Assembly (NCBI GenBank): GCA_964035545.1
Contig: OZ037770.1
Coordinates: 4,744,662 to 4,808,661 of the forward strand
Origin: Bugula neritina
Taxonomy: Eukaryota; Animalia; Bryozoa
Direction: 5' to 3'
Length of the DNA stretch: 64,000 nt
In this document: in pieces, positions 29,218 to 64,000 of the stretch
Position numbering within the stretch: the first letter of the stretch is position 1
How the letters are laid out: the number at the start of each line of letters is the position of its first letter
Made by a program: the position numbers and the translations under genes
Notes under the pieces: model-generated
The model's input: only the letters and a program-made list of their open reading frames with translations
Database searches by the model: none
What the model was told of the DNA's origin: nothing

Positions 29218-30054
29218 TCATTGGTTGGACTCTGATTCTTGTAGCGACCGTGCTCTGTGTCGAGCCTGTCGGGCCCGTAGCCGCCTCTTCAGTCGTCCCA
29301 CTGAGTCCTTCAACTGGTATAGACCTGTCGTCGTATCCAGCAGGTCAGGGGCAAGTTGTGTGAACTCGGCTTGTAGTCTTATAAGCCGCTCTTCTACGTT
29401 AGCCAGCTGGCTAGGCCTTGGTGGGGTTGTAGTGGTCTCCGTTAGAGGGGATATTGTTGTTTCTTCTACTTCTGGGGTGTTGCTGGGGTTGACGGGGGTA
29501 GGAGGTGGGCCCTGAACCATAGGGGACTTATGGCGGGCGGATAGTAGCAGTACGTGAAACCCTGACGTTAGTGCGGCCAGGGTGATAGCCTTCCTGATGA
29601 CTGGCTTGATGGCATCCAGGTATAGGGGGAAACTGTCTTCATCAACAGTGTGGTTCTCTCCGGCGAAGCAGCTTAGCTTATGTACTGTCACGGGATACGG
29701 GTAGACGTCGTGGAACCCGCAGGGACAGAAGTGGAGTAGGAAATGGGCGTCTACATGTAAACGCAGGGAGCGGTGTGATGGGCACTCCTCAAAGCAGACC
29801 TGGCAGGTTCGGTGTGGTCCACTGGTCCTATGTTGGTATCTCCTTGCGGAGCCCCTCCCACGGGGGGTTTTTGCACTTCCGGACCTGTTTCTGGTTCCGG
29901 AAGTGGTGATGATGGCAGGCTTGACGTTGGGGGCGGTGAGCGCACTTTCAAGGACGGAAGTGGCCTTTCTCGCCTCGCCAAGTCTTCCTGACGTGTCATG
30001 GAGGTGTTTCCGGCCAGGTTGACAGTCTCCGCCTGCCGAGACCTTCTCGCACAA
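29218..30054 (-). CDS. Accessory ORF of element 3: C2H2-like zinc fingers plus C-terminal coiled coil
   Basis: CQVCFEECPSHRSLRLHVDAH-FLLHF-CPCGFHDVYPYPVTVHKLSC and LANVEERLIRLQAEF...LYQLKDSVGRLKRRL. Homology to elements 4 and 5 starts near 29820. No upstream ATG, so the start is uncertain. Confidence 0.75.
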   Translation of the reverse strand: MCEKVSAGGDCQPGRKHLHDTSGRLGEARKATSVLESALTAPNVKPAIITTSGTRNRSGSAKTPRGRGSARRYQHRTSGPHRTCQVCFEECPSHRSLRLHVDAHFLLHFCPCGFHDVYPYPVTVHKLSCFAGENHTVDEDSFPLYLDAIKPVIRKAITLAALTSGFHVLLLSARHKSPMVQGPPPTPVNPSNTPEVEETTISPLTETTTTPPRPSQLANVEERLIRLQAEFTQLAPDLLDTTTGLYQLKDSVGRLKRRLRARQARHRARSLQESESNQ

Positions 30055-31904
30055 TGCGTCTGCCGCCCCGCTTCACCAGGGAGACGGCTATGCTTGTTGG
30101 TCTGGCAGACTTTGCACCGTCTCACTCTGCGTCGGATATCCCGTTCCATGTTAGGCCAGTACCACCGGAGTTGTAGCTTGGTGACCACCCCTTGGACTCC
30201 TCCGTGAGTCTCCTCGTGGGTGTCTTGTATCAACTTCCGGCGGATGGCAACTGGGCAGACAACCCTCTTCCTGGCTGGCTGTCTGCTGTTGGCGGCCAAG
30301 GTCATGGTTAGCAGACCATCTGGCCCGACCCGCAGAGAGCTCCAACGTTGACAGTACAGCCGTAACTCGGCGCATCCCTGTCGCCGTTGTGTACTACTGG
30401 GTCGTCGCCCCTCCTGTTTCGCTCGGTACACGTCGGCTACCACCCCAGGAAGGCATTCCTGGAGCTTCGGCAGCTCCCTAACGTTACCAGCCCATACAGG
30501 TTTGGCGCGGAGGCTCTGGGCAGCCTCCGGGGGCGTGTCAGCCCTCTGTTGGAGTAGCTGAGCAGGGGCGGTCCTCGCCGCCCGTGGTATCTCACGGTAG
30601 CCTGCTCTATTTAGGCGGGCTCCGTGGTCTGTGTGGCTGAACGCCTCACTGTACCCATGTGGCAACCTAGCCATAGCCTGGCGCTTCCCGTTGCCTGTGC
30701 AGCCACGCGTCCCTGGAGGAGGGGAGGCGTGGGTTGGGACGATCCTCCGCCCTCGAGACGGGCTCTGCTGAGGACCTTCCGTCAGAGCTCCCGACGACGG
30801 CCCAATGGCTTCCTCCTGGACAGGATGGAAGCGACCCAGCATGGATCTGGGTGGTAGGTCTACTGTCTCTGAGAAGGGGTTGACACACTGCACTGAGATC
30901 TCTCCTTGCCCCGTGAGCCGGCTAAAACTACGGGCAAGTTGGACTCTCGAGTGCGTACTTTCGACAACTCCCAACTTAGAGGTTTGGCCACCGTCTACCT
31001 TGCAGCGGACGGTAGCCCGGGAGTGGCCTGGTATAGTACAGCTCCGTACTACCTGCACTGCTCCCGCTAGAGGACGACCAAACTTATTGACACAAGCGAT
31101 CTCCTTGTCGCCCATGATCATCGCAGATTTACTGAAATCGATGCGACAACCGTGTCGTTGTAAGAATGGCATCCCGAGGATAGCATCCTCGTTGAGCTGC
31201 CCGACGATAAACGTCTCCTGGATGGCCTGGTTACGGACGTAACCAGTTAGCTCAATAATGCCGTAGAAGGGAATGCACGACCCGTCTGCCAGGGTGCCAT
31301 GATCCCCCTCATACGGTGCCAACCCGTCCTTGACCTTAGCGCTGAGGGTGTCAAAGAACTGACGGCTAAGGAGGTTGGTGGTGCAGCCGGAGTCCAGGAG
31401 GAAGTTGGCAGGCTTGCCGGCTAGCTTCCCTGGTAGGAAGTAGCTACTTCCGTGCGGCTGCAATTGTGTGTGCCGTGGTTGCACCTCCCTCGCTGTGGGT
31501 CGAGGGGTCCACGGTCGGCGGCGACTATTGACCAGCTGCCGAGGTTGGGGCGATACGCCTTGCGGCGCCTGTACCGTTTCCCTCGCAGGCTCTGTGGTCA
31601 ACCGTCTGCCGGCTCCGTGTTGGTGCCGGAGTGGCGTAGAGGACCCAGGCGGCGAGTGGCTTGAGCCTATTTGCCGCGGGGGTCGCCACTTCACAGCATC
31701 TCCGCGCGGCGCCCAGCGGGGCGACAGACGCGCGGGCCTCCCTGGGTGATTCACAGACGGCCCGCAGGAGGTGGGAACATCTGCGGGCCGGGGTAGTTTA
31801 ACCCTGGTGGGAGCTGAGGGCAGTTTCTCTGGAAATGTCCTGGTCTTCCGCATTCCCAGCAGAAGTGGTGCCCCATGCCTGGTGATTGTACCTGCGGCCC
31901 GCAA
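29751..31904 (-). CDS. Internally deleted Pol of element 3 (protease, linker, integrase Zn-binding domain, Pro-rich tail), in the -1 frame relative to gag
   Basis: FLLDSGCTTNLLS protease; THEETH...RWYWPNM...CKVC HHCC domain; no YxDD, RNase H or DDE core. The frame stays open across both deletions. Confidence 0.85.
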   Translation of the reverse strand: MRAAGTITRHGAPLLLGMRKTRTFPEKLPSAPTRVKLPRPADVPTSCGPSVNHPGRPARLSPRWAPRGDAVKWRPPRQIGSSHSPPGSSTPLRHQHGAGRRLTTEPARETVQAPQGVSPQPRQLVNSRRRPWTPRPTAREVQPRHTQLQPHGSSYFLPGKLAGKPANFLLDSGCTTNLLSRQFFDTLSAKVKDGLAPYEGDHGTLADGSCIPFYGIIELTGYVRNQAIQETFIVGQLNEDAILGMPFLQRHGCRIDFSKSAMIMGDKEIACVNKFGRPLAGAVQVVRSCTIPGHSRATVRCKVDGGQTSKLGVVESTHSRVQLARSFSRLTGQGEISVQCVNPFSETVDLPPRSMLGRFHPVQEEAIGPSSGALTEGPQQSPSRGRRIVPTHASPPPGTRGCTGNGKRQAMARLPHGYSEAFSHTDHGARLNRAGYREIPRAARTAPAQLLQQRADTPPEAAQSLRAKPVWAGNVRELPKLQECLPGVVADVYRAKQEGRRPSSTQRRQGCAELRLYCQRWSSLRVGPDGLLTMTLAANSRQPARKRVVCPVAIRRKLIQDTHEETHGGVQGVVTKLQLRWYWPNMERDIRRRVRRCKVCQTNKHSRLPGEAGRQTHCARRSRQAETVNLAGNTSMTRQEDLARRERPLPSLKVRSPPPTSSLPSSPLPEPETGPEVQKPPVGGAPQGDTNIGPVDHTEPARSALRSAHHTAPCVYM

Positions 31905-32702
31905 GGCTCACGGGCAGTATCTACCTGGCTTGGGGAAGCTAATGTGGTGACCAGTTTATCTAGCATGTCAGTCATCTGTGAGATTTTTGACGCTAGTGAC
32001 ATCTGGTTCCCATTAGCCACCGCGGAGGGTTCCGCGTTTAGTTCGGTGTGAGCAGTAGAGTGCTCCGTGGTCACCTGGCGGGAGGCCACGCGGTTGCGGT
32101 GCATATGAGTCGCCAAGAGGTAGGCTTCTCCCACCGCAAGTGCATCTTTGACTGTGGTGACTCCCCTCGCTTGGAGTTGATGGTGGAGCCCCAAGTCGTT
32201 GATGGACTGCACGAAGGCATCATAGGTATACCTCTCACGGTGTACCGGAGGCAGATCGCGGAATGCGATCTGTGCTAATGGGTATACCGTGGCAGCATGC
32301 TCTTCTAGTGACGTGTGAGGATCACGCCGCATCCTCTGTAGACGGGCCCGCGCATCTATGGGAGAGATGCCAAAACGGGCCCGCAGGGAAGCAAAGATTC
32401 CGTCTATGTCAGGTCCCGCTCCGTACGGCTTAGCTTTGCCCGTCAGCGCCATCCTGAGCTTGAGCAACGCCACCCTTGGTGGCCACTCCGCAATCTCCAT
32501 CACATCTTGGAATATTTGGATAAACTGCTCCACTGCTTCTTCGCCTGCGAAGGTGGGCGCCTTCATCCGGTATCTGTCTTCACCATGCTCTCTAAGAATT
32601 CTCACTTCTTCATCTAACACCACTGGTTCCACAGGTATATCAACATTATCTCTCTCACCTTCATTCAGTGGAATGGGTAGCTCCGTGCCGTCTTCTGCCA
32701 TG
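31751..32702 (-). CDS. Gag of element 3
   Basis: MAEDGTELP...KAPTFAGEEAVEQFIQIF..., CCHC knuckle CWECGRPGHFQRNC; homologous to the gag at 38969-39874. Confidence 0.9.
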
Positions 32703-33574
32703 ACTGCTATACGCAAGATCCCACCGCTGCCACCACTGTAGTAATTTGTGCAATTACCGAGCGTGAGTTATTTACTTGCGTATAGTTAGCTGGTTATTCT
32801 GTTATCAATTACTAGGGTAGCTGTCGAGTAATTTGATTTATTATCCACAATAAAGCATAAACCAAACATCACATCAAATTATCCTATACAAGAGTCAACT
32901 ACTAACACATGTTACTACTCCAAGCCTCCGCTTACAACAACGTGATATAATGTTAATAACCCGGGAAGTGTCACGTGAATCGGAAGCATATCTTCCGGAG
33001 CTGCTAATTGGTTGCTACATAAGAGTCTAAGTATTCCAAGAGTAGGGAGAAGGCGATTCCCGTGTTTGTACTTTGCACTACTCACTACACTAGTACTACT
33101 AGTACTAGTAGTACTAGTAGTAGTAGTACTACTACTAGTACTAGTAGTACTAGTACTAACTACTAGTAGTACTAGTAGTAGAGTAATGAGTAGTACTACA
33201 TCGAGACTGAGCAGTGAAAACTGATGGTGATATGTACATATTGAAATATAAACTTATCAAAGTGATTAAATTACTTTGGTCAAATATTAATAAAATTATT
33301 AGCAACGCTAACCATTTTTTTTTAACTTTAGAGTGCAACACTAACTCACCCACTGCCACTGTGACACTGACTGGAAGCAGCTACATTCTGTTGCAAAATG
33401 AGAAATGAATTAAATATTGTCGGTTTCAGCGGCTAGAGCGGCAAGAGTCAGCAATCAAAATGTATTGGATGCAGTGGGGGAGGGGGTGGGGTGCTGCTTA
33501 GTACAAAACGATATTTTATGGATTTACTACTACGTCTGAGGCCTATTTCAATAATCGTATTGCTACAATCACTG

Positions 33575-49665: not shown

Positions 49666-52600
49666 CTATAAAACTATTTTATTATCACTACTACATATAA
49701 TACTGTTTTATGTCACTAATTAGCGTAATACTTTGAAAATAGTAAAATAGATAAAATTACGCAAGCAGCTGGGTTAGAGTTGTCTTATCTCAACACAATA
49801 AACACTGAACTATAAACTATACATTAAATGATTATTTAGAAAGAATATAAAGCTATCCAATAAAATATATGTTACTCATGGTTATGACTACTGAAATCCA
49901 CCATATAATGAATTTATTCAATCAGTAGATGACAGGTGTCAGAATGATAGACACCACCTGCTAGCACTGTGTAATAATTGAACTGTCACTGTTTTTGTAT
50001 GATGTTACAGAAAATATGGAAATCTGGTTCAGACATTCTGGACAGTCTCCTGTAAGCTGGTGGGATGTATGGTCTGCTGATACCAAGTCATATACTACTG
50101 CTGAGGTGAAACGTGAAGTTGGGAGTTATAATATCACAGATTTGAAACTGGAAGAGAAAATTCCAAGTAACATTGGAGAGATTGCTGGTGAAGCCCTGCG
50201 TCTATGTGTTTCTAACCTGACTGACAGAGCAAGTCTAGACAAGTGAGTGTCTACTAAAATAGCAGTGTAAATGTTAAATGATAATGGATAATATATGCTG
50301 AAGCTGAAGGATATTTTTGCTCAGAATATATTCATACAATATAATATACATCAACATAGTAATATGTGCAACATTGTATGTAATCTAAGTGAGGTTATAG
50401 TTGTAGGAATTAAGGAGTGTAAAACTGCCTGTACTGTTATTTGATTATAGTATTGAATAAATCATGTTTCATGTAGCTAAAAACTGAAGTAATGTACAGT
50501 TTACAATATATTATACAAAAAATTATGTTTTGTCGTTAACTGCAAATATACAATATTAAACATTGGTTGATATATTAACTCACATAGGGTTGTAGAGTGA
50601 GGCCTTATGTACTATAAACTAACAGCTAACCTTGCATAATGAAGCTTCCTCTCCTCACCTACAACATAATATAACTGAATCTCTTAGCTGTTTTTTGCAG
50701 CAATATATCTGTTTCCTGCATGTTTTTTTTGTTAAATACACAAGTAGCATGATATATTAGTATATATTATTTTGATATGGTAGACATAAATAAATGAGAC
50801 ACTTTATATATTACAGTCTATGTCAGCTGACTCAGTTAGAGAGACTAGACATGGAATGGAATCCTCTCAACACAGTACCAGAAGTTGTGTCATCACTCAC
50901 ATCACTTAAAGAGTTGGATATGGGGAGCTGTAGATTATCTACTCTACCTGAGAGGTTTCTGTGTCACAGTCTCTCTTGTTTAAAACACTCAAAGATTCAC
51001 ATGTTGATATAATGCTTACGAAGTATTGCTAATTAGTATGTCACTATGTATTGTTGAAAAGCATAGAGCTATAAATTACAATTTTCTTGAAGCTATATGA
51101 TATTAGAATTTCTCAAAACTTGAAAATATTTTAAATATGTTTCAGTTATCTGGCATTACATTTCCTTTTGCTATAAAACTTTCTTCAACAAATACTATAG
51201 CACCCACTTGTAGTTTACTAGAATCTATTTCTTATTAAACGCTTATTAGCGTTCGGTATTTTGCTTTGAATTTGCTTTGTTGCAATAAATTTGTTTCTTG
51301 AATATTTTACCTGATTGAATACACAAGTATAGTATATACAGTATATAATAACATCCTGATACAGTGGATTATATATATTATGCACTTTATATTACAGTCT
51401 ATGTCAGCTGACTCAGTTAGAGAAACTAGACATAGGAGATAATCCTCTCAACACAGTACCAGAAGTTGTGCCATCACTCACATCACTTAAAGAGTTGTAT
51501 ATGAGGAACTGTGGTTTATCTACTCTACCTCAGAGGTTTGTGTGTCACAATAGTTATTTCTTGTGTATTAAACATTCCATATTTCACTTCTTTAATGCTT
51601 CTCAAGTAGTGTTATGCTATGATATCATATATTGCCAACGTATGTTAAAATACCTGAATATGCATTTTCGAACTTGTCCAATAGTTTGTGCTAAGGTGGA
51701 AATAATACAGCATTATGGTATGCCATTGTATATCCTTATATCACAAGAACCTTTTGTAATGAATAATAAAACAGCCATCTGCAGTTTACTGGCAATCATG
51801 GTAATAATCGAATCTTTCTTAGCTTCTTGCGTCTAGCACTTTGACTATCCATTACCGGAATGAATTTTTTTTCTGCATTTTTACTTGGTTGACTGTGCTT
51901 AGCAATAAAACATGTACAGTGTATATTATTATGACACAGGAGACTACATATATCATACCCGTTATAATTATTGCAGTCTATGCCAGCTGACTCAGTTAGA
52001 GAAACTAAACTTAAGAGGAAATCCTCTCAACACAGTACCAGAAGTTGTGTCATCATTCACATCACTTAAAGAGTTGGATATGGGGAGCTGTAGATTATCT
52101 ACTCTACCTAAGAGGTTTCTGTGTCGCAGTCTTTCTTGTTTAAAACACTCAATGATTCACATGTTGATATAATGCTTACCAAGTATTGCTAATTAGTATG
52201 TCACTGTGTATTGTTGAAAAGCATAAAGCTATAAATTACAATTTTCTTGAAGCTATATGATATTAGAATTTCTCAAAACTTGAAAATATTGTAAATATGT
52301 TTCAGTTAGCTGGCATAACATTTCCTATTGCTATAAAACCTTCTTCAACAAACACTATAGCACCCACTTGTAGTTTACTAGAATCTATTTCTTATTAAAC
52401 GCTTATTAGCTTTCGGTATTTCACTTTGAATTTGGTTTGTTGGAATAAATTTGTTTCTTGAATATTTTACCTGATTGAATACACAAGTAGTATATACTAT
52501 TATCATGATACAGTGGATTAAACATAATATAACACACTTTATATTACAGTCTATGTCAGCTGACTCAGTTAGAGAAACTGGACATGGGATGTAATCCTCT

Positions 52601-55600
52601 CCATACAGTACCAGAAGTTGTGTCATCACTCACATCAATTAAGGAGTTGGATATGTGGAGATGTGAATTATCTATTCTACCTGGGAGGTTTGTATTGCAC
52701 AATATTATCTCTGTTTCAAACATTCAATATTTCACTTCTTTAATGCTTATCAAGTAGTGTTATGCTATATATTATCATATATTGCCAACGTATGTTAAAA
52801 TACCTATAGATATGCATTTTCGAACTTGTCCAATAGTTTGTGCTAAGGTGGAAATAATACAGCATTATGGTATGCTATTGTATATCCTTATAACACAAGA
52901 ACCTTTTGTAATGAATAATAAAACAGCCATCTGCAGTTTACTGGCAATCATGGTAATAATCGAATCTTTCTTAGCTTCTTGCGTCAAGCACTTTGACTAT
53001 CCATTACCGGAATGAATTTTTTTTCTGCATTTTTTACCTGGCTGACTGTGCTTAGCAATATAACATGTACAGTGTATATTATTATGACACAGTAGACTAC
53101 ATATATCATACCCTTTATAATTATTGCAGTCTATGCCAGCTGACTCAGTTAGAGAAACTAGACATAAGATGGAATCCTCTCAACACAGTACCAGAAGTTG
53201 CGTCATCATTCACATCACTTAAAGAGCTGGATATGTGGAACTGTAAAATATTAACTTTACCTGAGAGGTTTGTGGAACACAGTCTTTCTTGTTTCAAACA
53301 CTTAATAATTCACAGTTTGATATAATTGTAAACTATCATCCCTGGTTTGTAAACAGGCACAATGTGGTCTTCAGTCTCTACTGATGTTTTATTGGTAAAA
53401 CTGTCGTGAAAACTACAATTGATGAAATTGTGAATTTGCCATAATGAATGATAATATGTGATAAAACTTTCATCAGTGGTAATTTGACACTAACTAATAA
53501 GCTTCAAGTAAAGAACAAGTATTGCTATAAAAATCAGTATACACCATCCAAGTTATTAAAATTGATATTAAAAAAGATAATACAAATGCCATAAATGATT
53601 GTCAAAAATACTACAATAACAACAATCACCTTGTTAGACCATCCGGGAATGGAGCTTATAACTTTGATGTTAATGTAGTAGGTAAATATTTTCTACTTTG
53701 ATAATATTGATTTAAATGCAACAAAATATTTAACATAACAAGTGAAAAGTTACTCAGCAGTTTATGCTACATGTTAGCTGACTAAAAGTGTAGCATAGAA
53801 CGAGAGCTGAGAGTAAAATATTCTTTAATGAATGAGTCATTTCAGGAAGCTGATGGTGTAAAAAGCTATTTATATATCTTAGTCATAGCGAAATCATACA
53901 CATGAGGAAATCATGTTGACTTTCGTGTGCAAATTTGTCATAGCCATAAAAGCAAAACAGCTACATATAAATGACTAATGCAATGGTTTTCTAATTATAG
54001 GCACGTTGGTTAACTTTGTTTGTTTTGATGAGAGCAAAAAATTTTACTGGCATTCCAATTAATTACAATAATGCTTACCAAGTATTGTCAATTAGTATGT
54101 CACTATGTATTGTTGAAAAGCATAAAGCTATAAATTACATATTTCTTGAGGCTATATGATATTAGAGTTTCTGAAAACTTGAAAATAAATATGTTTCAGT
54201 TATCTGGCATTACATTTTCTATTACTATGAAACCTTCTCCAACAAACACTATAGCACCCACTTGTAGTTTACTAGAATCTAGTTCACATTAAATGCTTAT
54301 TAGGTTTCGGTATTTCACTTTGAATTTGCTTTGTTGCAATAAATATGTTTCTTGGATATTTTACCTGATTGAATACACAAGTGGTATACACTATTATCAT
54401 GATACAGTGGATTAAACACATAACACACTTTATATTACAGCCTGTGTAAGCTGACTCAGTTAGAGACACTATACATAGGATGGAATCCTCTCAACACAGT
54501 ACCAGAAGTTGTGTCATCACTCACATCACTTAAAGAGTTGGATATGTGGTACTGTGAATTATCTACTCTACCTGGGAGGTTTGTATTGCACAATATTATC
54601 TCTGTTTCAAACATTCAATATTTCACTTCTTTAATGCTTATCAAGTAGTGTTATGCTATTTTATTATATATTGCCAACGTATGTTAAAAAACCTATAGAT
54701 ATGCATTTTCGAACTTGTCCAATAGTTTGTGCTAAGGTGGAAATAATACAGCCTCATGGTATGCCATTGTATATCCTTATATCACAAGAACCTTTTGTAA
54801 TGAATAATAAAACAGCCATCTGCAGTTTACTGGCAATCATGGTAATAATCGAATCGTTCTTAGCTTCTTGCGTCAATCACTTTGACTATCCATTACCGGA
54901 ATGAATTTTTTTCTGAACTTTTTACCTGACTGACTGTGCTTAGCAATATAACATGTACAGTGTATATTATTATGACACAGTAGACTACATGTATCTTACC
55001 CTTTATAATTATTGCAGTCTATGCCAGCTGACTCAGTTAGAGAAACTAAACTTAAGAAAGAATCCTCTCTACACAGTACCAGAAGTTGTGTCATCACTCA
55101 CATCACTTAAAGAGTTGGATATGAGGAGCTGTAAATTATCTACTCTACCTGAGAGGTTTATGGAGCACAATTTTTTTTCTTTCAAACACTCAATAATTCA
55201 CATGTTGATATAATGCTTACCAAGTATTGCTAATTAGTATGTCACTATGTATTGTTGAAAAGCATAAAGCTATAAATTACATATTTCTTGAGGCTATATG
55301 ATACTAGAGTTTCTCAAAACTTGAAAATAAATATGTTTCAGTTATCTGGCATTACATTTCCTATTACTATGAAACCTTCTCCAATAAATACTATAGCACT
55401 CGCTTGTAGTTTACTAGAATCTAGTTCGCATTAAATGCTTATTAGGGTTCGGTATTTTACTTTGAATTTGCTTTGTTGCAATAAATTTGTTTCTTGGATA
55501 TTTTACTTGATTGAATACACAAGTAGTATATACTATTATCATGATACAGTGGATTAAACACATAACACACTTTATATTACAGTCTATGTAAGCTGACTCA

Positions 55601-58600
55601 GTTAGAGAAACTAGACATAGGATGGAATCCTCTCAACACAGTACCAGAAGTTGTGTCATCACTCACATCAATTAAAGAGTTGGATATGTGGTGCTGTGAA
55701 TTATCTACTCTACCTGGGAGGTTTGTGTGTCACTACAAATTTTATATCATTTTTAACGTTCAATAATTATTATTTTGTAGGAGAATTTCAGCACAGTAAA
55801 TACTACATTAAGATGTTTATACTTTTTCTCTGCAAACCCCCATACGAATCTTAACGTTTCAGAGGATATTGTCAATTAGCACACTATCAGTTGTATAGTT
55901 GATTATTATTCACACACTGAGTATATATAATAATTGAATACTTGTATGCTATTATAATAAACTGTTAACTTCTCATGCTCTGCATGTAATATGCTACAAT
56001 AAGTTGCTTGGTAGTTGAGTTGTATATAGTTTTACCTGGTTGAAAACAAAATGTGAATATAGTATAAAATATTATAGTAATGCAGACTACATATATATCA
56101 TATACTATATATTACAGTCTATGTCAGCTGACTCAGTTAGAGAAACTGTACATAGGAGCAAATCCTCTCAATACAGTACCAGAAGTTGTGTCATCACTCA
56201 CATCACTTAAAGAGTTGGATATGAGGATATGTGAATTATCTACTCTACCTGGGAGGTTTGTATTGCACAATATTATCTCTGTTTCAAACATTCAATATTT
56301 CACTTCTTTAATGCTTATCAAGTAGTGTTATGCTATTTTATTATATATTGCCAACGTATGTTAAAAAACCTATAGATATGCATTTTCGAACTTGTCCAAT
56401 AGTTTGTGCTAAGGTGGAAATAATACAGCCTCATGGTATGCTATTGTATATCCTTATATCACAAGAACCTTTTGTAATGAATAATAAAACAGCCATCCGC
56501 AGTGTACTGGCAATCATGGTAATAATCGAATCTTTCTTAGCTTCTTGCGTCAATCACTTTGACTATCCATTACTTGAATGAATTTTTTTCTGAACTTTTT
56601 ACCTGGCTGACTGTGCTTAGCAATATAACATGTACAGTGTATATTATTACGACACAGTAGACTACATATATCATACCCTTTATAATTATTGCAGTCTATG
56701 CCAGCTGACTCAGTTAGAGAAACTAAAGTTAAGAGGAAATCCTCTCAACACAGTACCAGAAGTTGTGTCATCACTCACATCACTTAAGGAGTTGGATATG
56801 GGGAGATGTAACTTATCTACTCTACCTCAGAGGTTTGTGGAACACAGTCTTTCTTGTTTCAAACATTCAATAATTCACATGTTGATATAATGCTTACCAA
56901 GTATTGCTAATTAGTATGTCACTATGTATAGTTGAAAAGCATAAAGCTATAAATTACAATTTTCTTGAGGCTATATTGTATTTGAGTTTCTCAAAACTTG
57001 AAAATAAATATGTTTCAGTTTTCTGGCATTACATTTCCTATTGCCATAAAAAGTTCTTCAACAAATACTATAGCACCGCTTGTACTTTACTAGAATCTAT
57101 TTCAGATTAAATGTCTTTTACTTTAAATATGCCTTGTCAAAATAAATTTTTTTTGCATGTTATACCATATTGAATACACCACTGTAGTATACACAGTACA
57201 TAATATTATCCTGATACAGTGGATTGCATATATTATGCACTTTATATTACAGTCTGTGTCAGCTGACTCGGTTAGAAAAACTAGACATAGGATATAATCC
57301 TCTCAACACAGTACCAGAAGTTGTGTCATCACTCACATCACTTAAAGAGTTGTATATGTGGAACTGTAAATTATCTACTCTACCTGGGAGGTTTGTGTGT
57401 TACAATAATTATTTCTTTTGTTTTAAACATTCTATATTTCACTTCTTTAATGCTTCTCAAGTAGTGTTATGCTATGATATCATATATTGCCGACGTATGT
57501 TGAAAAACATAAACATGTATTTTTTTAACTTATCTAGTTGTTTGTCCTAATGTAGAAATAATACAATTTTATAGTGAGCCATTGTATATCCTTATATCAC
57601 AATACTTTTTGTAATCAAAAATAAAGCAGCCCTCTGCAGTTTACTGACAATCATGGTAATAATCGAATCTTTCTTAGCTTCTTGCGTCAAGCACTTTGAC
57701 TATCCATTACTGGAATGAATTTTTTTTCTGCATTTTTTACCTGGCTGACTGTGCTTAGCAATATAGTATGTACAGTGTATATTATTATGACACAGGAGAC
57801 TACATATATCATACCCTTTATAATTATTGCAGTCTATGCCAGCTGACTCAGTTAGAGAAACTAAACTTAAGAAGGAATCCTTTCAACACAATACCAGAAG
57901 TTGTGTCATCACTCACATCACTTAAAGAGTTGAATATGTGGGACTGTAGATTATCTACTCTACCTGAGAGGTTTGTGGAACACAGTCTTTCTTGTTTCAA
58001 ACACTCAATAATTCACATGTTGATAAAATGCTTACCAAGTATTGGGAATTAGTATGTCACTATGTATTGTTGAAAAGCATAAAGTTATAAATTACATATT
58101 TCTTGAGGCTATATTGAATTAGAGTTTCTCATTACTTGAAAATAAATATGTTTCAGTTATCTGTCATTACATTTCCTATTGCTATAAAACTTTTTTAACA
58201 AATATTATAGCATCCACTTGTAGTTTACTATAGTGTGTATTTCTCATTAAATGGTTATTAGAGCCTTCTGTACTTTACTATGAATATGCCTTAGCGTAAT
58301 AAATTTGCTATTTGGATATTTTACTTGATTGAATATGCAGTGTTTGTTATGATACAATAAATTAAATATATCACATACTTCTTATTACAGTCTATGTCAG
58401 CTGACTCAGTTAGAGAAACTAGACATAGAAGGGAATCCTCTCAACACAGTACCAGAAGTTGTGTCATTACTCACATCACTTAAAGAGTTGAATATGGAGA
58501 GATGTAACTTATCTAATCTACCTGAGAGGTTTGTGTGCCACAACGAGTTTTATATATCACTTTTAACATCCAATAATTGTTATTTTGAAGCAGATTTCAA

Positions 58601-59686
58601 CACAGTAAATACTACATTAAGATGTTTATACTTTTTCTCTGCAAACCTACATATGAATCTCATCGTTTCTGGGGATATTGTCAATTAGCACACTATCTAG
58701 AAGTTTCCTCTGCTTCACAAGTTATTTTATAGTATTTCTATATCTTTTTGAATATTTCCCATGATAGGTTGACTGGGCTGTTTTTCAGAAATCGTTTTAT
58801 TAACTCTTTTCATTATATTATAACTATAGCTACTTCTGTACACATAATATTATATTGTTATGGTAACGCAGTTTCTTATCACTGTCTAATTGAATGCACA
58901 AGTGCTATATACAGTACATAATATTATCCTGATACAGTGGATTACATGTATTATGCACTTTATATTACAGTCTATGTCAGGTGACTCAGATAGAGAAACT
59001 AAACATAGGAGATAATCCTCTCTACACAGTACCAGAAGTTGTGTCATCACTCACATCACTTAAAGAGTTGGATATGGAGAGCTGTGGATTACCTACTCTG
59101 CCTGAGAGGTTTGTGGAACACAGTCTTTTTTGTTTCAAAAACTGAATAATTCACATGTTTTTATAATGCTTACCAAGTGTTGTTAATTAATATGTCACTA
59201 TGTATTGTTGAAAAGCATAAAGCTATAAATTGAAAAATTTTCTTGAGTCTATATGATATTAGAGTTTCTAAAAACTTGAAAATAAATATGTTTCAGTTAT
59301 TAGGCATTACATTTCTCAATGCTATAAAGCCTTCTTCAACAAATACCATAGCATCCACTTGTAGTTTACTAGAATCTATTTCATGTTAAATGCTTATCAG
59401 CTTTCAGTATTTTACTTTGAATTTGCTTTATTGCAATAAATTTGTTTCTTGGATATTTTACCTGATTGAATACACAAGTATAGTATATACAGTATATAAT
59501 AATATCCTGATACAGTAGATTACATATATTATGCACTTTATATTACAGTCTGTGTCAGCTGATTCAGTTAGAGAAACTAAACATAGCATGGAATCTTCTC
59601 AAAACAGTACCAGAAGTTTTGTCATCACTCACATCACTTAAAGAGTTGAATATGAACAACTGTAAATTATCTACTCTACCTGAGAG
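49329..59686 (+). CDS. 5' part of a large LRR protein gene (candidate Roco/MFHAS1-like intracellular receptor); 3' part not in the window
   Basis: Putative start exon 49266-49341 (accATGG, MATA G|gtgagt). Exon 50011-50242 (ENMEIWFRHSGQSPVSWWDVW...SLD AA|gtgagt; phase 1 to 2). Then 15 phase-2 LRR exons, all stop-free, with no terminal exon. The Roco assignment is inference only. Confidence 0.8.
49617..49663. repeat. (TA)n microsatellite
   Basis: About 23 TA units. Confidence 0.95.
50817..59686 (+). repeat. Tandem array of 15 exon-plus-intron units; each exon is 138 nt and encodes two 23-aa LRRs
   Basis: Exons: 50817-50954, 51398-51535, 51977-52114, 52550-52687, 53130-53267, 54441-54578, 55018-55155, 55583-55720, 56118-56255, 56695-56832, 57253-57390, 57833-57970, 58391-58528, 58971-59108, 59549-59686. 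Consensus SLCQLTQLEKLxIxxNPLNTVPEVVSSLTSLKELxMxxCxLSTLPE; cag| acceptors and AG|gttt donors. Confidence 0.95.
53327..54067. mobile_element. 741-bp insertion (solo-LTR-like) in LRR intron 5
   Basis: TGTAA...TTACA ends and a 5-bp TSD ATAAT (53322-53326 and 54068-54072). Sister introns show the empty site gat-ataat-gcttacc. Confidence 0.85.
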
Positions 59687-60016
59687 GTTTGTTTGTCACT
59701 ACAAATTTTATATCATTTTCAACATTCAATAATTATTATTTTGTAGCATAATTTCATCACAGTAAATACTACATTAAGATGTTTATACTTTTTTTCTGCA
59801 AACCTCCATATGAATCTTACCGTTTCTGGGGATATTGTTAATTAGCACGCTATCTAGAAATTTCCCGACTTCACAAATAAATTTTTAGTCTTCCAATATC
59901 TTTTCTGAAATGCTTCCCATAATAGGTTGACTGGGCTTTTCTTCAGAAATCGTTTTATCAACTCTTTTCATTATATTATAATGATAGCTACTTCTGTACA
60001 CATAATTGGTATATAT

Positions 60017-63000
60017 TGTAGTAATTTTGGTAATTACTGGTTTTGTGGGCTTCTAGCGAGCAATATATTTATATTATCTTCCAATAATATCACGGCTTGT
60101 AACAGGAATGAATGATTTATTTATACACAATAAAAGTAGTAGCAAAACGATAAATCCGGTATCACTGGTAAAAATATACATCTATCTTACACTAACTAGC
60201 CATCATACTCTGAGTATGGCTGCTATCTACATCCAGCGCCCTCTGCGCATCGCTGGGGCTCTCATGTGACAGATATATGATTGGCTGGGGAGCGCGTGGG
60301 ATAACATACTACACTCCCCACTACACTGCCTCTCCCAGCAGGAAGCCCACCTTCCTGATAATACCAAAATAAAAAATTAAAATAACAACAAAAAAACAAT
60401 AAGATATCTGCATCACAAGATCAAAAAATGTATACTTAGGCCAACGGCCTATTAAAAAAAAATCTTGTTAAAATATAAAAATTATGTACTATAAAACTAA
60501 GAGATTGTATATGTACCAAGAGCCTCTGGTCTGGCACCAAGAGATATGATGTGTAGAGAGACGGTAAGTGAGGCACCACCTGCGGCGCAGATCAGGAGGA
60601 CAGCTGGATGGAGTTAGGGACGGGGAAATAGAAAGGGAAGGAGAACGTCATCCATGACACGTGTCGGGGCAATGTGGAGGGTAGACACTCAGTCTTCATC
60701 ATCCCTCTTGAGCTGGGCCACATAGTCCCGGAGAGCCTTGAGTTCAGAAGCGGCGGCTGATATCCTAGGCGCCAACCGCTTGATCTCCCTCTCTCTAGTT
60801 CATGCATCCGTTGCTCCATCTCTCTTAGATTTCTAGCAACAGAGGAGTGGCGGTTGGGGGATGAAGATTGCTAACGCCGGCGTCATCTCTGGGGGATTTC
60901 TATCCGTTGTACGACTACTACGGGTACGGTGTTGGAAAAGGGCACAGTGTGAGCAGGGGGTGACGGGCGAGGTATTGTGAGCTTCCTAAACCCAGGGGAT
61001 TTGGGGCAGGGTCCTTGGGTAATGGTACGGGGAGCGGGGAATTTTTGGCTCAGCCGTTTGTAACGTGCAGGGTCTGAAATGAATGGCTTGGTGAGGCCTA
61101 GAAAAGTAGAGAAGGAAAGCTTGTTCACATTGTAGAGATGTCCAGTGTGACACTCCATAGTCCTCTGGTAACGGAGGATGTAGTCCCTGTGGTAGCTGTA
61201 CTCCCCACAGGGACAGAAGGTGGTGATGAAATGTTGAGGGATGTGTACTCGGAGGCGGCGAGGTGTGGTAAAATGCTGTTGACAAAGCCGGCAGGTGGTG
61301 CAGTCGTCGTCTCCTTTATTTTGTTGAATCATGTCCTCGGTATGTTGGGTAACCCAGCTAGACCGGGTTATGAGTATTTCTGGTAGTGTTGTGGAGGTAG
61401 GTTCCGTCTCCTAAGCCATCTCCAATGGTGGCATATCATTGTAGTTAGGAGAGCGAGTGGTACCTGAAAGAGCAGAATTATTGTTGGATCGAATTTGATC
61501 TTTACAGCATAATTCTGATGACAATCGACTGTTACTAGTCTGAGAGTCATGCATCTTTTTGTACGGCACTCGAGAGACTGTGTTTGGATGCCTAGACTGA
61601 CTGAGAAACATAGTGACATGGCTGGAACTGTTTGCCCCGGGCGCATTAATTCCACCTACTACTCCGCCCTCGCAAAAAATGATATTTTCGTGGTGTTTAC
61701 AACTCCCACGTTTCGCTGCCAGTCTCTCCGTACGGCACTCAGCTTGGCCTTCATATCTGCCGCTTGTAACACAGTCACATACGAAGTCTTTCAAATATGC
61801 TGGGGGTTGCCTAGTACGTTGTCCACTTTCTAAGGGAAGTGGTGTGCTAGTTGGGGGAGATGGTGTAGTCACTGCTGGTGGGGGTGTACTCACTGGTGGA
61901 CTTTTATGTTCCGCCGGTGGCGTTTTCGGCCTGCTATTGACTGTTGTATCATTTTCAAGATCTCCAGATGGAGCCCTCCCCTGGGGGGGTTATGCACTTC
62001 CGGAGCTGAAACAGGTTCCGGAAGTGGTGGCGTTAGACTTGGCGCTGGAGGTGGTGGGCGCACTTTTGGTAACGCAAGTGGCCTTTCCTGCCTCACCAAG
62101 TCTTCTGCCCGCGGCATGATCACTTCATACTCTGGTTCAGGTCGCCGCCGCCCGCGCGTTGCTGTCTGCCTCCTGGGCTCTAACAACGGGGGAGCTTTTC
62201 CTGCCGCACCTGGGCTAGTCCAATACGACTTCAAGCGAGCCTCATTTTAGATAGACACCTGTCCTGAGCGCTCAAACTTGTAGGTGTGATTGGGCATCAC
62301 TTCAACTACCGCGTAGGGTCTCACGAACTTAGGCTGTAGCTTAGCCGCCTGTTCTCGATGCCTACGGCAGTTGACCATTCAGACCCAGTCTCCAACTTGG
62401 TAGAGGGGTGGTTCTTCGGAGTCTTCTTTTTGCACTTGCCACTGCTTTTTCCGCAGTATTTCGTGTGCAACCTTCATTTGCTCTACCGATTTGCTGGCAT
62501 ACCCAAATCCCAAACCCCAAATCCTGGGGGGGTAACCCAGTCTTCCACAGCTCGTACTCTTTCAGGATCAGTCGCCACGCCATGACGGCCGACGTGGTGC
62601 CCCAGGTACTTCACCTCCAGCTGCAAGAGAGCGCTCTTGGAAGGTTTGAGCTTCAGGCCGGCACCTCTGAGTCATTCGAACATCTCCTGCATATGACTGA
62701 CGTGTGTCTGGAAATCCGGGAAAATCACAATGACAACATCGAGGTAGACTAGCAGTGTCTCCCAGTGGAGCCCACTGAGGACCTGTTCCATGAGCCTCTG
62801 AAACGTGGCGGGGGCGGAGGTCAACCCAAAGGGTAGTACTTTCCACTTCCACAGTCCGTTCCATGTGATGAACGCCGTCTTCTCCTGGGCGTCGGGAGTC
62901 AGAGGGACCTGCCAATAACCGCTCAGCAAGTTTAGTGTGCTAAAGTACTTGCTGCCGGCCAGGGCGTCCAGAGATTCATCAATCCGAGGTAGAGGGTAGG

Positions 63001-63167
63001 CGTCCTGTATGCTTACGCTATTTAGTTTGCGGTAATCCACACAGAACCACCAACTGCCGTTTTTCTTCCGGACCAGGACGACCGGCGAGCTCCACGCACT
63101 ATGTGCTGGCTCTATGAGGCCGCGGTCCAAAAGATCCCGGACTTGTCGGCTGACCTCCTTTTCTTCA
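60017..63167 (-). mobile_element. Decayed, 5'-truncated and internally deleted Ty3/gypsy element related to elements 3 and 4, in the intron after LRR exon 15 (element 5)
   Basis: 3' LTR ~60017-60325 (TGTAGT...ACTACA) followed by the same cccagcag(g/a)aagccc context as element 3. RT at ~63160-62600 (QDAYPLPRIDESLDAL; YLDV) is joined almost directly to the integrase C-terminus near 62480. Zn-finger ORF at 61332-60883. Stops and frameshifts throughout. Confidence 0.9.
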
Positions 63168-64000
63168 TTAGTAAAAAATCACTTAGTAGATTATATAGTA
63201 TGTTTGATTTAGGTAATTCAAGTTCTACTTTTATTTATTTTGAAATAAAAGATCTGCCTTTATATTGTAAACCAAAGAAGACAAAAAAAATTATTCAATA
63301 TTGCAACTTTGTTTTTTTTTCATGCTCTTTTTTGGTTATCTATCTCCAATTCTCAGTGTAATAGAAACCAATTTTTATCCTATTCCTGTTCTTAAACAGC
63401 CTGTTAATATATTGTTTCATAATTACTTTACAATTCTAAATTTTGAATTAACTTGCCTTTAAAAATGTAACGTGTTCCTGCAAGATGATGACTTTCCAGA
63501 ATTTTATTCTCTCGTAGTGAAATAATTCACAACTTCTATTTCCTGTCTAGAAACTATAATACATTTATTAGAGCAATTAGTGAGAGGTTGTGGCAGAAGT
63601 ATTTTATTCTACTTGAAATTACTTTAATTAATGGCTTGTGTAGATGTTTCAGAGCTCTACTGTGTTCCTATTTGATGATAAATTGCATGTATTATGACAC
63701 ATATAAAACAATATTCCTTATAATTATAACATCCATATAGTAGAATATCAGTGTGAGTAGTTACTCAGTGATCAGAAATGTCAGAAGTATTTTATTTTCA
63801 CTTGACATAACTTTAATGCCTTATGCGGAATATGCCACAAAGCTGTAGCCTACCATGTTCATGTTTGCTGATAACTGTGTTATGGCACATACTAGGAATT
63901 TTCTACTCTGTAGTATAAAATATTACTCTCTCTAGTAGAACAGCAGTGTGAACAGTTACTCAGTTATCTGCCATATAGAAAAAGATGATAGTATTACATG

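What the first reader, a model, noticed from the sequence alone, without database searches (positions are those of the whole stretch)
50817..59686. Array of interchangeable two-LRR exons, hypervariable only at predicted ligand-contact codons: candidate diversified immune receptor system
Seen: 15 exons of exactly 138 nt, all phase 2-2 and stop-free, nearly identical at scaffold codons but highly variable at about six codons. LRR1 core: DMEW, DIGD, NLRG, DMGC, DIRW, YIGW, NLRK, DIGW, YIGA, KLRG, DIGY, NLRR, DIEG, NIGD, NIAW (8 different residues at the last position). LRR2 core: GSCR, RNCG, GSCR, WRCE, WNCK, WYCE, RSCK, WCCE, RICE, GRCN, WNCK, WDCR, ERCN, ESCG, NNCK (7 residues at the second position). 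No two exons are the same, and these codons look more divergent than the adjacent introns. Known: these are the x positions of LxxLxLxxN/CxL, the concave face that binds ligand in lamprey VLRs and plant NLRs; a similar exon-per-repeat hypervariable design is described for Ectocarpus ROCO and NB-ARC genes. Inference: a receptor repertoire generated by diversifying selection plus exon shuffling. Because all exons are symmetric, any subset could be spliced or recombined in frame.
Basis: partly seen in the sequence, partly recalled or inferred. Interest (0 to 1): 0.88.

Follow-up and report, generated by a model that had tools for sequence, protein, structure and literature searches.

The report
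Hypervariable LRR exons, ROCO-caspase gene
Fifteen near-identical exons build the sensor arm of a moss-animal (Bugula neritina) gene that joins leucine-rich repeats, a GTPase switch and a caspase in one protein. Six or seven codons per exon change amino acids several times faster than neutral DNA, as in immune receptors, but all the variety seen lies in the inherited genome.

Summary

They are exons 2-16 of a roughly 20-kb gene. It starts at exon 1 (50016-50241) and runs past the window's end into a Roc-COR GTPase exon and caspase exons with the His/Cys pair intact. The genome is almost certainly Bugula neritina.

Diversifying selection is supported. In 14 independent pairs of family cassettes whose flanking introns differ by 0.36%, the seven named codons differ by 7.1% (odds ratio 21). 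Changes there are 71 replacement to 3 silent, and the silent rate at those codons is not raised. Scaffold codons are under purifying selection.

Germline shuffling is shown by:
- three intron classes in the array;
- two chimeric introns;
- a 10.5-kb tract, starting at the E12/intron boundary, that is 99.4% identical to a gene 300 kb away with only 8 cassettes.

Not shown: pick-and-mix splicing, somatic rearrangement, an immune role, or transcription of this particular copy. Spliced family RNA does exist.

The closest described design is the brown-alga ROCO gene with 72-nt one-LRR exons. I found no paper on the animal family.

This scan has already found the same family at many other places in this genome.

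The parts
50016..50241 (+). Exon 1. The ATG comes right after a possible acceptor, and the exon codes about 75 residues with no signal peptide. The donor is AA|gtgagt, phase 2.
   Evidence: Sequence read. At least 33 other homologues exist, nearly all in C6:2.5-6.25 Mb. Run X6 has GT..AG joints from 50242 to cassette acceptors.
50817..50954 (+). Cassette E1 (DMEW / DMGSCR)
51398..51535 (+). Cassette E2 (DIGD / YMRNCG)
51977..52114 (+). Cassette E3 (NLRG / DMGSCR), follows a class-B intron
52550..52687 (+). Cassette E4 (DMGC / DMWRCE)
53130..53267 (+). Cassette E5 (DIRW / DMWNCK)
53322..54072 (.). A 750-nt repeat inserted in intron 5; it is why that intron is 1173 nt rather than about 440 nt.
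   Evidence: 95% identical to a stretch in an intron of the upstream paralogue. High word depth in all runs.
54441..54578 (+). Cassette E6 (YIGW / DMWYCE)
55018..55155 (+). Cassette E7 (NLRK / DMRSCK)
55583..55720 (+). Cassette E8 (DIGW / DMWCCE); looks like a former last cassette
55721..56117 (+). Chimeric intron I08. Its first 168 nt are 92% identical to the start of the terminal intron; its 3' end resembles class A.
56118..56255 (+). Cassette E9 (YIGA / DMRICE)
56695..56832 (+). Cassette E10 (KLRG / DMGRCN)
57253..57390 (+). Cassette E11 (DIGY / YMWNCK). Its flanks are nearly identical to cassettes of two other genes, yet the exon differs at 14-15 nt.
57833..57970 (+). Cassette E12 (NLRR / NMWDCR). 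The recombination breakpoint with the paralogue at 5.10 Mb lies between 57949 and 57980.
58391..58528 (+). Cassette E13 (DIEG / NMERCN); looks like a former last cassette
58529..58970 (+). Chimeric intron I13. Its first 320 nt are 87% identical to the start of the terminal intron; its last 85 nt are class A.
58971..59108 (+). Cassette E14 (NIGD / DMESCG)
59549..59686 (+). Cassette E15 (NIAW / NMNNCK), the last of the array. It has a 5-difference patch against its twin.
59687..64000 (+). Terminal intron. It continues 356 nt beyond the window to the acceptor ttattag|A of the 2-kb LRR-Roc-COR exon (L004:357-2403). Caspase exons follow at L004:4561-4716, 5055-5282 and 5872-6024.
60883..63130 (-). 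Remnant of a Gypsy-type retrotransposon inside the terminal intron; also present in the 99.4% identical tract of the paralogue.
   Evidence: ORFs; shared tract
57981..64000 (+). In-window part of the 10.5-kb tract (to about window-equivalent 68480) that is 99.4% identical to C6:5.103-5.113 Mb.

Best explanation
The array is the main part of the LRR arm (30 of about 33 repeats) of one intact-looking member of a large Bugula neritina family of cytosolic single-chain LRR-Roc-COR-caspase proteins.

Shown here:
- The cassettes are real, phase-symmetric coding exons.
- Six or seven codons per cassette, at the x5, x7, x8 and x10 positions of LxxLxLxxN/CxL, are driven to change amino acid. The scaffold codons are conserved.
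- The variety is made in the germline in three ways: duplication of a two-cassette unit, block exchange between clustered paralogues with breakpoints in conserved cassette ends, and point or short multi-nucleotide changes fixed by selection.

Inferred:
- The variable positions line the concave binding face.
- Each gene recognises a different, fast-changing ligand from a pathogen, symbiont or another colony.
- Binding releases the Roc-COR GTPase/dimerisation switch, which brings the fused caspase domains together and activates them. This would be a one-piece analogue of an NLR inflammasome.
For: Gene model:
- Exon 1, the 15 cassettes and the Roc exon all join in phase 2.
- Roc scores 31.5 bits against a cut-off of 27. 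Peptidase_C14 scores 34.2 and 27.7 bits against a cut-off of 21.4.
- The His and Cys align with the catalytic pair of caspase-8.
- Watersipora proteins of 1413-1419 aa have the same LRR + Roc-COR + caspase layout.

Constraint:
- 174 of 179 family cassettes in 24 sampled arrays are exactly 138 nt, AG/GT-bounded and open.
- Scaffold codons show 73 replacement to 61 silent changes, against 27% silent expected.

Selection:
- In 14 independent young pairs, introns differ by 0.36%, the seven codons by 7.1% (odds ratio 21, P 2e-17) and the rest of the exon by 0.79%.
- The result holds when all window exons are left out (odds ratio 5.5-12.7).
- At the seven codons, single-nucleotide changes are 71 replacement to 3 silent (P 0.001).
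- Their silent rate is 1.1-1.9%, about the intron rate.
- Per-codon tests single out 11, 13, 14, 36, 37 and 39.
- In the 10.5-kb twin tract, the seven codons show 6/63 differences against 47/8039 in non-coding DNA.

Shuffling.

Family size: at least 74 Roc-COR exons, 61 without stops.

Spliced family RNA: GT..AG and cassette-to-cassette joints occur only in run X6.
Against: - There is no functional, expression-pattern or binding evidence for any member, and no paper on the family.
- Transcription of this particular copy is not shown. The RNA-like contigs are 60-70 nt long and fit several cassettes.
- The position of the variable residues on the concave face rests on general LRR knowledge, not on a model of this protein.
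- The COR-A match is below Pfam's cut-off (19.1 bits against 35.3).
- Young pairs were chosen by intron similarity. If introns are homogenised by conversion, the intron yardstick exaggerates the ratio. Against exon silent sites the ratio is still about 2.3 from single-hit changes alone and about 4.6 counting multi-hit codons.
Confidence: 0.75

Rival explanations
1. Individual-level diversification. Cells, zooids or colonies use different subsets of cassettes, either by alternative or mutually exclusive splicing (as in Dscam or the brown-alga ROCO isoforms) or by somatic recombination (as in lamprey VLR). One gene would then yield many receptors.
For: - All junctions are phase 2, so any subset stays in frame.
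- Paralogues with near-identical 3' halves carry 8 and 15 cassettes, so arrays of different length are viable.
- Run X6 has a joint from the exon-1 donor to a class-B-type acceptor that this gene has only from E3 on.
- Brown-alga ROCO genes do show LRR-exon splice variants (PMC11378527).
Against: - The X6 joints have only 25-26 nt on one side and fit several cassettes and paralogues, so they show no skipping.
- The one run that covers the introns, and so reads as DNA (X1), has no listed joint in the stretch laid, E1-E8. Contigs would miss rare forms.
- The cassettes have ordinary splice sites and sit inside a complete gene, unlike VLR donor cassettes.
- All the diversity seen is accounted for by germline copies.
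Confidence: 0.07
2. The same protein and the same selection, but the conflict is not with pathogens. The cluster could be a colony self/non-self (fusion or rejection) system. It could also control programmed polypide degeneration, with rapid change driven by symbionts or selfish elements.
For: - Bryozoans are colonial and show allo-incompatibility (mentioned in PMC8195603).
- The caspase effector points to cell death.
- The family is large, clustered and fast-changing.
Against: - The protein has no signal peptide or membrane segment in exon 1, so it cannot itself touch a neighbouring colony's surface.
- Nothing here distinguishes this reading from pathogen sensing.
Confidence: 0.15
3. Nothing adaptive: a decaying or relaxed tandem repeat whose apparent hypervariability comes from mutation hot spots or gene conversion between copies.
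For: - Differences per young pair are overdispersed (0,0,0,0,1,1,1,1,1,1,2,6,6,14), so some events are multi-nucleotide patches.
- There is whole-exon replacement between near-identical introns.
- 13 of 74 Roc-COR copies carry stops.
Against: - Exon length, splice sites and frame are kept in 174 of 179 cassettes.
- Scaffold codons are under purifying selection.
- Silent changes at the seven codons are not raised, while replacements are 5-10 times higher.
- The downstream exons of this gene are open and the caspase dyad is intact.
- The E15 patch has no template anywhere in the assembly.
Confidence: 0.03

Closest known systems
Brown-alga (Ectocarpus, Saccharina) LRR-ROCO genes with cassette LRR exons (PMC3341825, PMC11378527)
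   Same: - An N-terminal LRR array upstream of Roc-COR.
- Repeat-sized, equal-length exons in phase 2.
- Clustered expanded families and exon shuffling.
- Positive selection at concave-face x positions.
- Proposed as immune receptors without functional proof.
   Different: - Here the host is an animal.
- There are two LRRs (an N-type and a C-type) per 138-nt exon, instead of one per 72-nt exon.
- A caspase is fused behind COR, whereas the algal proteins end after COR.
- Splice variants are documented in the alga and not here.
- The Roc-COR part is only distantly related, so the design probably arose independently.
MFHAS1/MASL1-type animal ROCO proteins (the name RefSeq gives the Watersipora homologues)
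   Same: The LRR-Roc-COR order. About 32-36% identity over 630 residues to Watersipora proteins carrying that name.
   Different: Vertebrate MFHAS1, from my own knowledge, has no caspase, is single-copy and has no cassette-exon array. The automatic name hides the caspase domain that Pfam finds in XP_067947674.1.
NLR receptors and inflammasomes (plant NLRs; animal NAIP/NLRC4, NLRP)
   Same: The same logic: a variable LRR sensor, a nucleotide-driven oligomerisation switch and a death effector. Also shared are clustered birth-and-death families and positive selection in xxLxLxx.
   Different: The switch is a Roc-COR GTPase, not a STAND NACHT/NB-ARC ATPase. The caspase is part of the same chain instead of being recruited through CARD or PYD.
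Lamprey and hagfish variable lymphocyte receptors
   Same: LRR cassettes with diversity concentrated on the concave face.
   Different: VLR cassettes are unspliced donor pieces that are copied somatically into an incomplete gene, and the product is secreted or membrane-anchored. Here the cassettes are ordinary exons of a complete cytosolic protein, and no somatic step is seen.
Arthropod Dscam1 exon arrays
   Same: Tandem arrays of duplicated, frame-compatible exons coding a binding surface.
   Different: In Dscam one exon per cluster is chosen by competing RNA pairing. Here an LRR solenoid most likely needs many cassettes at once, and no choice mechanism was seen or tested.

Membership tests
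Leucine-rich repeat (typical 23-residue LRR) | LxxLxLxxN/CxL motif repeated with a period of 23; match to Pfam LRR models | tested here: met
   Each cassette holds two motifs, L7..N15..L17 and L30..C38..L40. LRR_4 scores 31.6 and 29.8 bits against a cut-off of 27, and LRR_1 scores 24.8-27.1 against 20.6, on single exons.
ROCO proteins | Roc GTPase domain with a P-loop | tested here: met
   PF08477 scores 31.5 bits against a cut-off of 27 in L004:322-2403, with a GNTMAGKTS P-loop.
ROCO proteins | COR domain directly behind Roc | tested here: inconclusive
   COR-A scores 19.1 bits, below the 35.3 cut-off. The exon does align over about 630 residues with ROCO proteins, and one of them (P0140) has COR-A at 47.3 bits.
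Caspases (Peptidase_C14) | Caspase fold with the catalytic His (SHG) and Cys (QACxG) | tested here: met
   PF00656 scores 34.2 and 27.7 bits against a cut-off of 21.4. THG and QACSEG align with SHG and QACQG of caspase-8 p18. A p10-like exon is found by tblastn. Protease activity was not tested.
Brown-alga type cassette-exon ROCO receptors | One LRR per 72-nt exon | tested here: not met
   There are two LRRs per 138-nt exon.
Brown-alga type cassette-exon ROCO receptors | Phase-2 symmetric exons, exon shuffling, and positive selection at the concave x positions | tested here: met
   Phase. Shuffling. Selection.
Brown-alga type cassette-exon ROCO receptors | Alternative splicing of LRR exons | not testable with these tools
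   Only short contigs of older runs were available, and they cannot order the cassettes.
VLR-type somatic cassette assembly | An incomplete germline gene flanked by donor cassettes that lack splice sites | tested here: not met
   The cassettes lie between exon 1 and the Roc exon of a complete gene, and all have AG/GT splice sites.
Dscam-type mutually exclusive splicing | One exon chosen per cluster; docking and selector RNA pairing | not tested
   No long transcripts were available. Intron conservation here reflects recent duplication, so it cannot reveal selector elements.

The most novel reading that the evidence does not exclude
The phase-symmetric cassettes are used combinatorially within one animal, through regulated exon choice or somatic exchange between the clustered arrays. 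Each zooid, cell lineage or colony would then carry its own set of LRR-Roco-caspase sensors. That would be an individual-level variable receptor system wired directly to a death protease, possibly serving as the bryozoan allorecognition locus.
Probability: 0.07. Interest if true: 0.92.

Novelty: new variant of a known kind. Interest (0 to 1): 0.66.

Why it matters
If the inference holds, an animal phylum with almost no studied immunity has about a hundred germline receptors. Each would sense with a rapidly selected LRR face, switch with an LRRK2-like Roc-COR module and kill with its own caspase.

This would give three things:
- a natural, testable case of what a ROCO GTPase switch does when its output is simple;
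- a second, independent invention of the cassette-exon LRR-ROCO design known from brown algae;
- candidate genes for pathogen, symbiont (Bugula carries the bryostatin symbiont) or colony recognition.

The quantitative result is as strong a selection signal as those used to define plant R-gene and VLR binding sites. The seven codons change 5 to 20 times faster than their flanking introns, almost always with an amino-acid change.

Tried and rejected
- Donor search for conversion patches. Among 166 sampled cassettes, most patch strings had no second copy. Both versions of the E15 patch are unique in the whole assembly. Templated conversion is therefore neither shown nor excluded, because donors could lie on the other haplotype.
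- Four-gamete test on LRR1 against LRR2 haplotypes. It gave no quartets, but it is uninformative because there are 103 x 117 haplotypes in 166 exons.
- RNA evidence. These give family-level splicing but not cassette order, level or strand. X4 and X7 may be RNA or thin DNA; I could not tell.
- Pseudogene or satellite reading: rejected (see rivals).
- Haplotig artefact for the 99.4% twin: rejected. Its 5' array is only 84-92% identical and has 8 cassettes rather than 15, and a third copy at 98% lies just upstream.
- Literature. Searches for ROCO + caspase + LRR or invertebrate, ROC-COR + caspase + amphioxus, and bryozoa + LRR + caspase found no description of this family.
- Not done. No structural model was made for that reason, and the fold tool returns no coordinates from which exposure could be read.
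Full report
**Observation**

A motif search finds exactly 15 copies of the conserved core on the + strand between 50.8 and 59.7 kb, and none elsewhere in the window. Each is open only in the frame that leaves one base at the 5' end and two at the 3' end, so both flanking introns are phase 2.

The 15 peptides are all different. The quoted tetrapeptides and residue counts are right. Single exons match Pfam's two-copy LRR model over residues 5-44.

**What the array belongs to**

- The window is G000:C6:4744662-4808661.
- An ATG at 50016 opens a 226-nt exon that ends in AA|gtgagt, which is phase 2.
- After E15 comes a 4.67-kb intron that carries a Gypsy remnant on the other strand.
- The intron ends 356 nt beyond the window at ttattag|A. 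That acceptor is again phase 2, and it opens a 2-kb exon.
- This exon codes two more LRRs, a Roc GTPase (31.5 bits, cut-off 27) and a weak COR-A match.
- Three further exons code a caspase: Peptidase_C14 scores 34.2 and 27.7 bits against a cut-off of 21.4, and tblastn with Watersipora proteins finds the p10-like part.
- THG and QACSEG align with the catalytic His and Cys of caspase-8.
- Exon 1 has no signal peptide, so the protein should be cytosolic.

The gene spans about 20 kb, and the 15 cassettes supply 30 of about 33 LRRs. All searches were made exon by exon.

**Organism**

G000 has 216,009,554 bases in 321 sequences. The Bugula neritina assembly tzBugNeri2.1 has 216.00 Mb in 320 scaffolds plus a mitochondrion (PMC11480708). 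The only named relatives are proteins of another cheilostome bryozoan, Watersipora subatra. The older runs that hold parts of the stretch are 'symbiont metagenome' samples of 2016, which fits PMC5041132. The identification as Bugula neritina is an inference, but a strong one.

**Family**

- At least 74 Roc-COR exons lie in the genome, 61 without a stop. About 31 of them, at 72% identity or more, lie in C6:2.5-6.26 Mb.
- Exon 1 has at least 33 other homologues, nearly all in that same stretch.
- In 24 sampled arrays, 174 of 179 cassettes are exactly 138 nt, AG/GT-bounded and open.
- 166 non-redundant cassettes give 151 different peptides.
- Across them, codons 11, 13, 14, 34, 36, 37 and 39 have 2.1-3.2 bits of entropy and 9-16 residue types. 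Every other codon has 1.3 bits or less.
- Watersipora proteins of 1413 and 1419 residues have the same LRR + Roc-COR + caspase order, under the automatic names 'MFHAS1 homolog' and 'uncharacterized protein'.

**Is it selection?**

Over all 105 window pairs, Nei-Gojobori gives dN 0.60 at the seven codons, against dS 0.08 and dN 0.06 at the other 38. Because the seven codons were chosen for being variable, I used three tests that do not depend on that choice.

1. *Young cassette pairs.* These were defined by their 400 nt of flanking intron, with each cassette used once.

   | Sample | Intron difference | Seven codons | Rest of exon | Odds ratio (P) |
   |---|---|---|---|---|
   | 14 pairs, flanks under 1% diverged | 0.36% | 7.1% | 0.79% | 21 (2e-17) |
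   | 10 to 37 pairs with no window exon | 0.35-3.2% | 4.3-15% | 0.34-2.9% | 5.5-12.7 (down to 4e-41) |

2. *Kind of change.* Among single-nucleotide codon differences, the seven codons show 71 replacements to 3 silent, where 18% silent is expected (P 0.001). The other codons show 73 to 61, where 27% silent is expected, which indicates purifying selection. The silent rate at the seven codons (1.1-1.9%) is no higher than the intron rate (1.0-4.3%). A mutation hot spot is therefore unlikely.

3. *Per-codon test on 45 independent pairs.* Codons 11, 13, 14, 36, 37 and 39 exceed the intron rate 4- to 9-fold after Bonferroni correction. Codons 34 and 18 are suggestive, with 10:0 and 9:0 replacement to silent changes.

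A caveat applies. Scaffold silent sites run about twice the flank divergence, so introns may be homogenised more than exons. Measured against exon silent sites, the ratio is still about 2.3 from single-hit changes alone and about 4.6 when multi-hit codons are counted.

**Shuffling**

- The 14 internal introns fall into three classes. Class A holds I1, 3, 5, 7, 10, 12 and 14. Class B holds I2, 4, 6, 9 and 11. Class C holds I8 and I13.
- Classes A and B alternate, so the growth unit is two cassettes of about 1155 nt. Cassettes after B introns read xLRx and those after A introns read xIGx.
- I08 and I13 start like the terminal intron that leads to the Roc exon and end like class A. E8 and E13 therefore look like former last cassettes, and the array appears stitched from three blocks.
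- From 57981 to about window-equivalent 68480, the gene is 99.4% identical to a gene 300 kb away. The tract covers E13-E15, the intron with its retrotransposon, the Roc-COR exon and the sequence up to the caspase. Upstream, the two genes are only 84-92% identical, and the other gene has 8 cassettes rather than 15.
- The breakpoint lies between 57949 and 57980, in the conserved end of E12 or the first bases of its intron.
- Inside that tract, the seven codons carry 6 differences in 63 nt. Non-coding DNA carries 47 in 8039, the other cassette positions 1 in 351, and the Roc-COR exon 5 in 2047 (Fisher P 3e-6).
- Some cassettes have been replaced wholesale between almost identical introns. E11 has 2/400 differences in its flanks against 14/138 in the exon.
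- Differences per young pair are overdispersed. Single substitutions and short multi-nucleotide patches both occur.
- For the E15 patch, neither version has a template elsewhere in the assembly. This is unexplained.

**Expression**

Only contigs of older runs were on offer.

Run X6, labelled RNA-Seq, covers the exon bins and almost none of the unique intron bins. It alone has GT..AG joints from the exon-1 donor (50242) to cassette acceptors, and cassette-end to cassette-start joints.

This shows that family members are spliced at the predicted sites. The pieces are 60-70 nt and fit several cassettes, so they show neither that this copy is transcribed nor which cassette follows which.

**Comparison and novelty**

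The nearest described system is the brown-alga LRR-ROCO family. It has 72-nt phase-2 exons with one LRR each, exon shuffling, positive selection on the concave face and LRR-exon splice variants (PMC3341825, PMC11378527).

The bryozoan genes differ in three ways. They have two LRRs per exon, they occur in an animal, and they carry a fused caspase. Reviews list CARD and death domains on Trichoplax ROCO proteins but no caspase fusion (PMC4104024). My searches found no paper on this family. I therefore rate it a new variant of a known kind.

Earlier notes of this scan describe the same family at many other places in this genome. I used them as leads. Here I re-tested the downstream ROCO-caspase, the family size and the selection signal.

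**Verdict**

Diversifying selection and germline shuffling are well supported. Combinatorial or somatic use and an immune role are open.

Noticed in passing
window:32-307 (+): This open stretch is near-identical in sequence to L004:5357-5665, the linker between the caspase exons of the gene studied. The window therefore begins inside the 3' end of the upstream paralogue, whose Roc-COR exon (C6:4740043) is 98% identical to this gene's.
   Followed up: partly
window:38969-45516 (+), 29218-32716 (-), 14534-18714 (+), 6317-10142 (-): Four Gypsy-type LTR retrotransposon bodies. One has an uninterrupted 1831-residue ORF. They fill most of the 50 kb upstream of the gene. I only observed them.
   Followed up: no
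window:53322-54072: A 750-nt insert in intron 5, 95% identical to a stretch in an intron of the upstream paralogue, with very high word depth in all runs. It is a dispersed repeat of unknown type. Only a weak 23-nt inverted repeat lies inside it.
   Followed up: partly
window:59644-59660 versus C6:5104345-5104364: Five differences within 16 nt, including all three bases of codon 36, between two copies that are otherwise 99.4% identical over 10.5 kb. Neither version has a second copy in the assembly.
   Followed up: yes
L010:5557-5685 (C6:4857556-4857684): A family cassette of 129 nt instead of 138 nt. It is an in-frame loss of three codons in the linker between the two LRRs, with splice sites kept.
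   Followed up: no
L010:3286 and L010:3854; L027:4213 and L027:5429: Perfectly identical cassette pairs, exon plus 400 nt of flank, within single arrays. These are very recent internal duplications, or possibly assembly collapse or expansion.
   Followed up: no
window:21264-21594: A long simple repeat that reads as poly-Leu on one strand and poly-Val on the other. It is not a gene.
   Followed up: no
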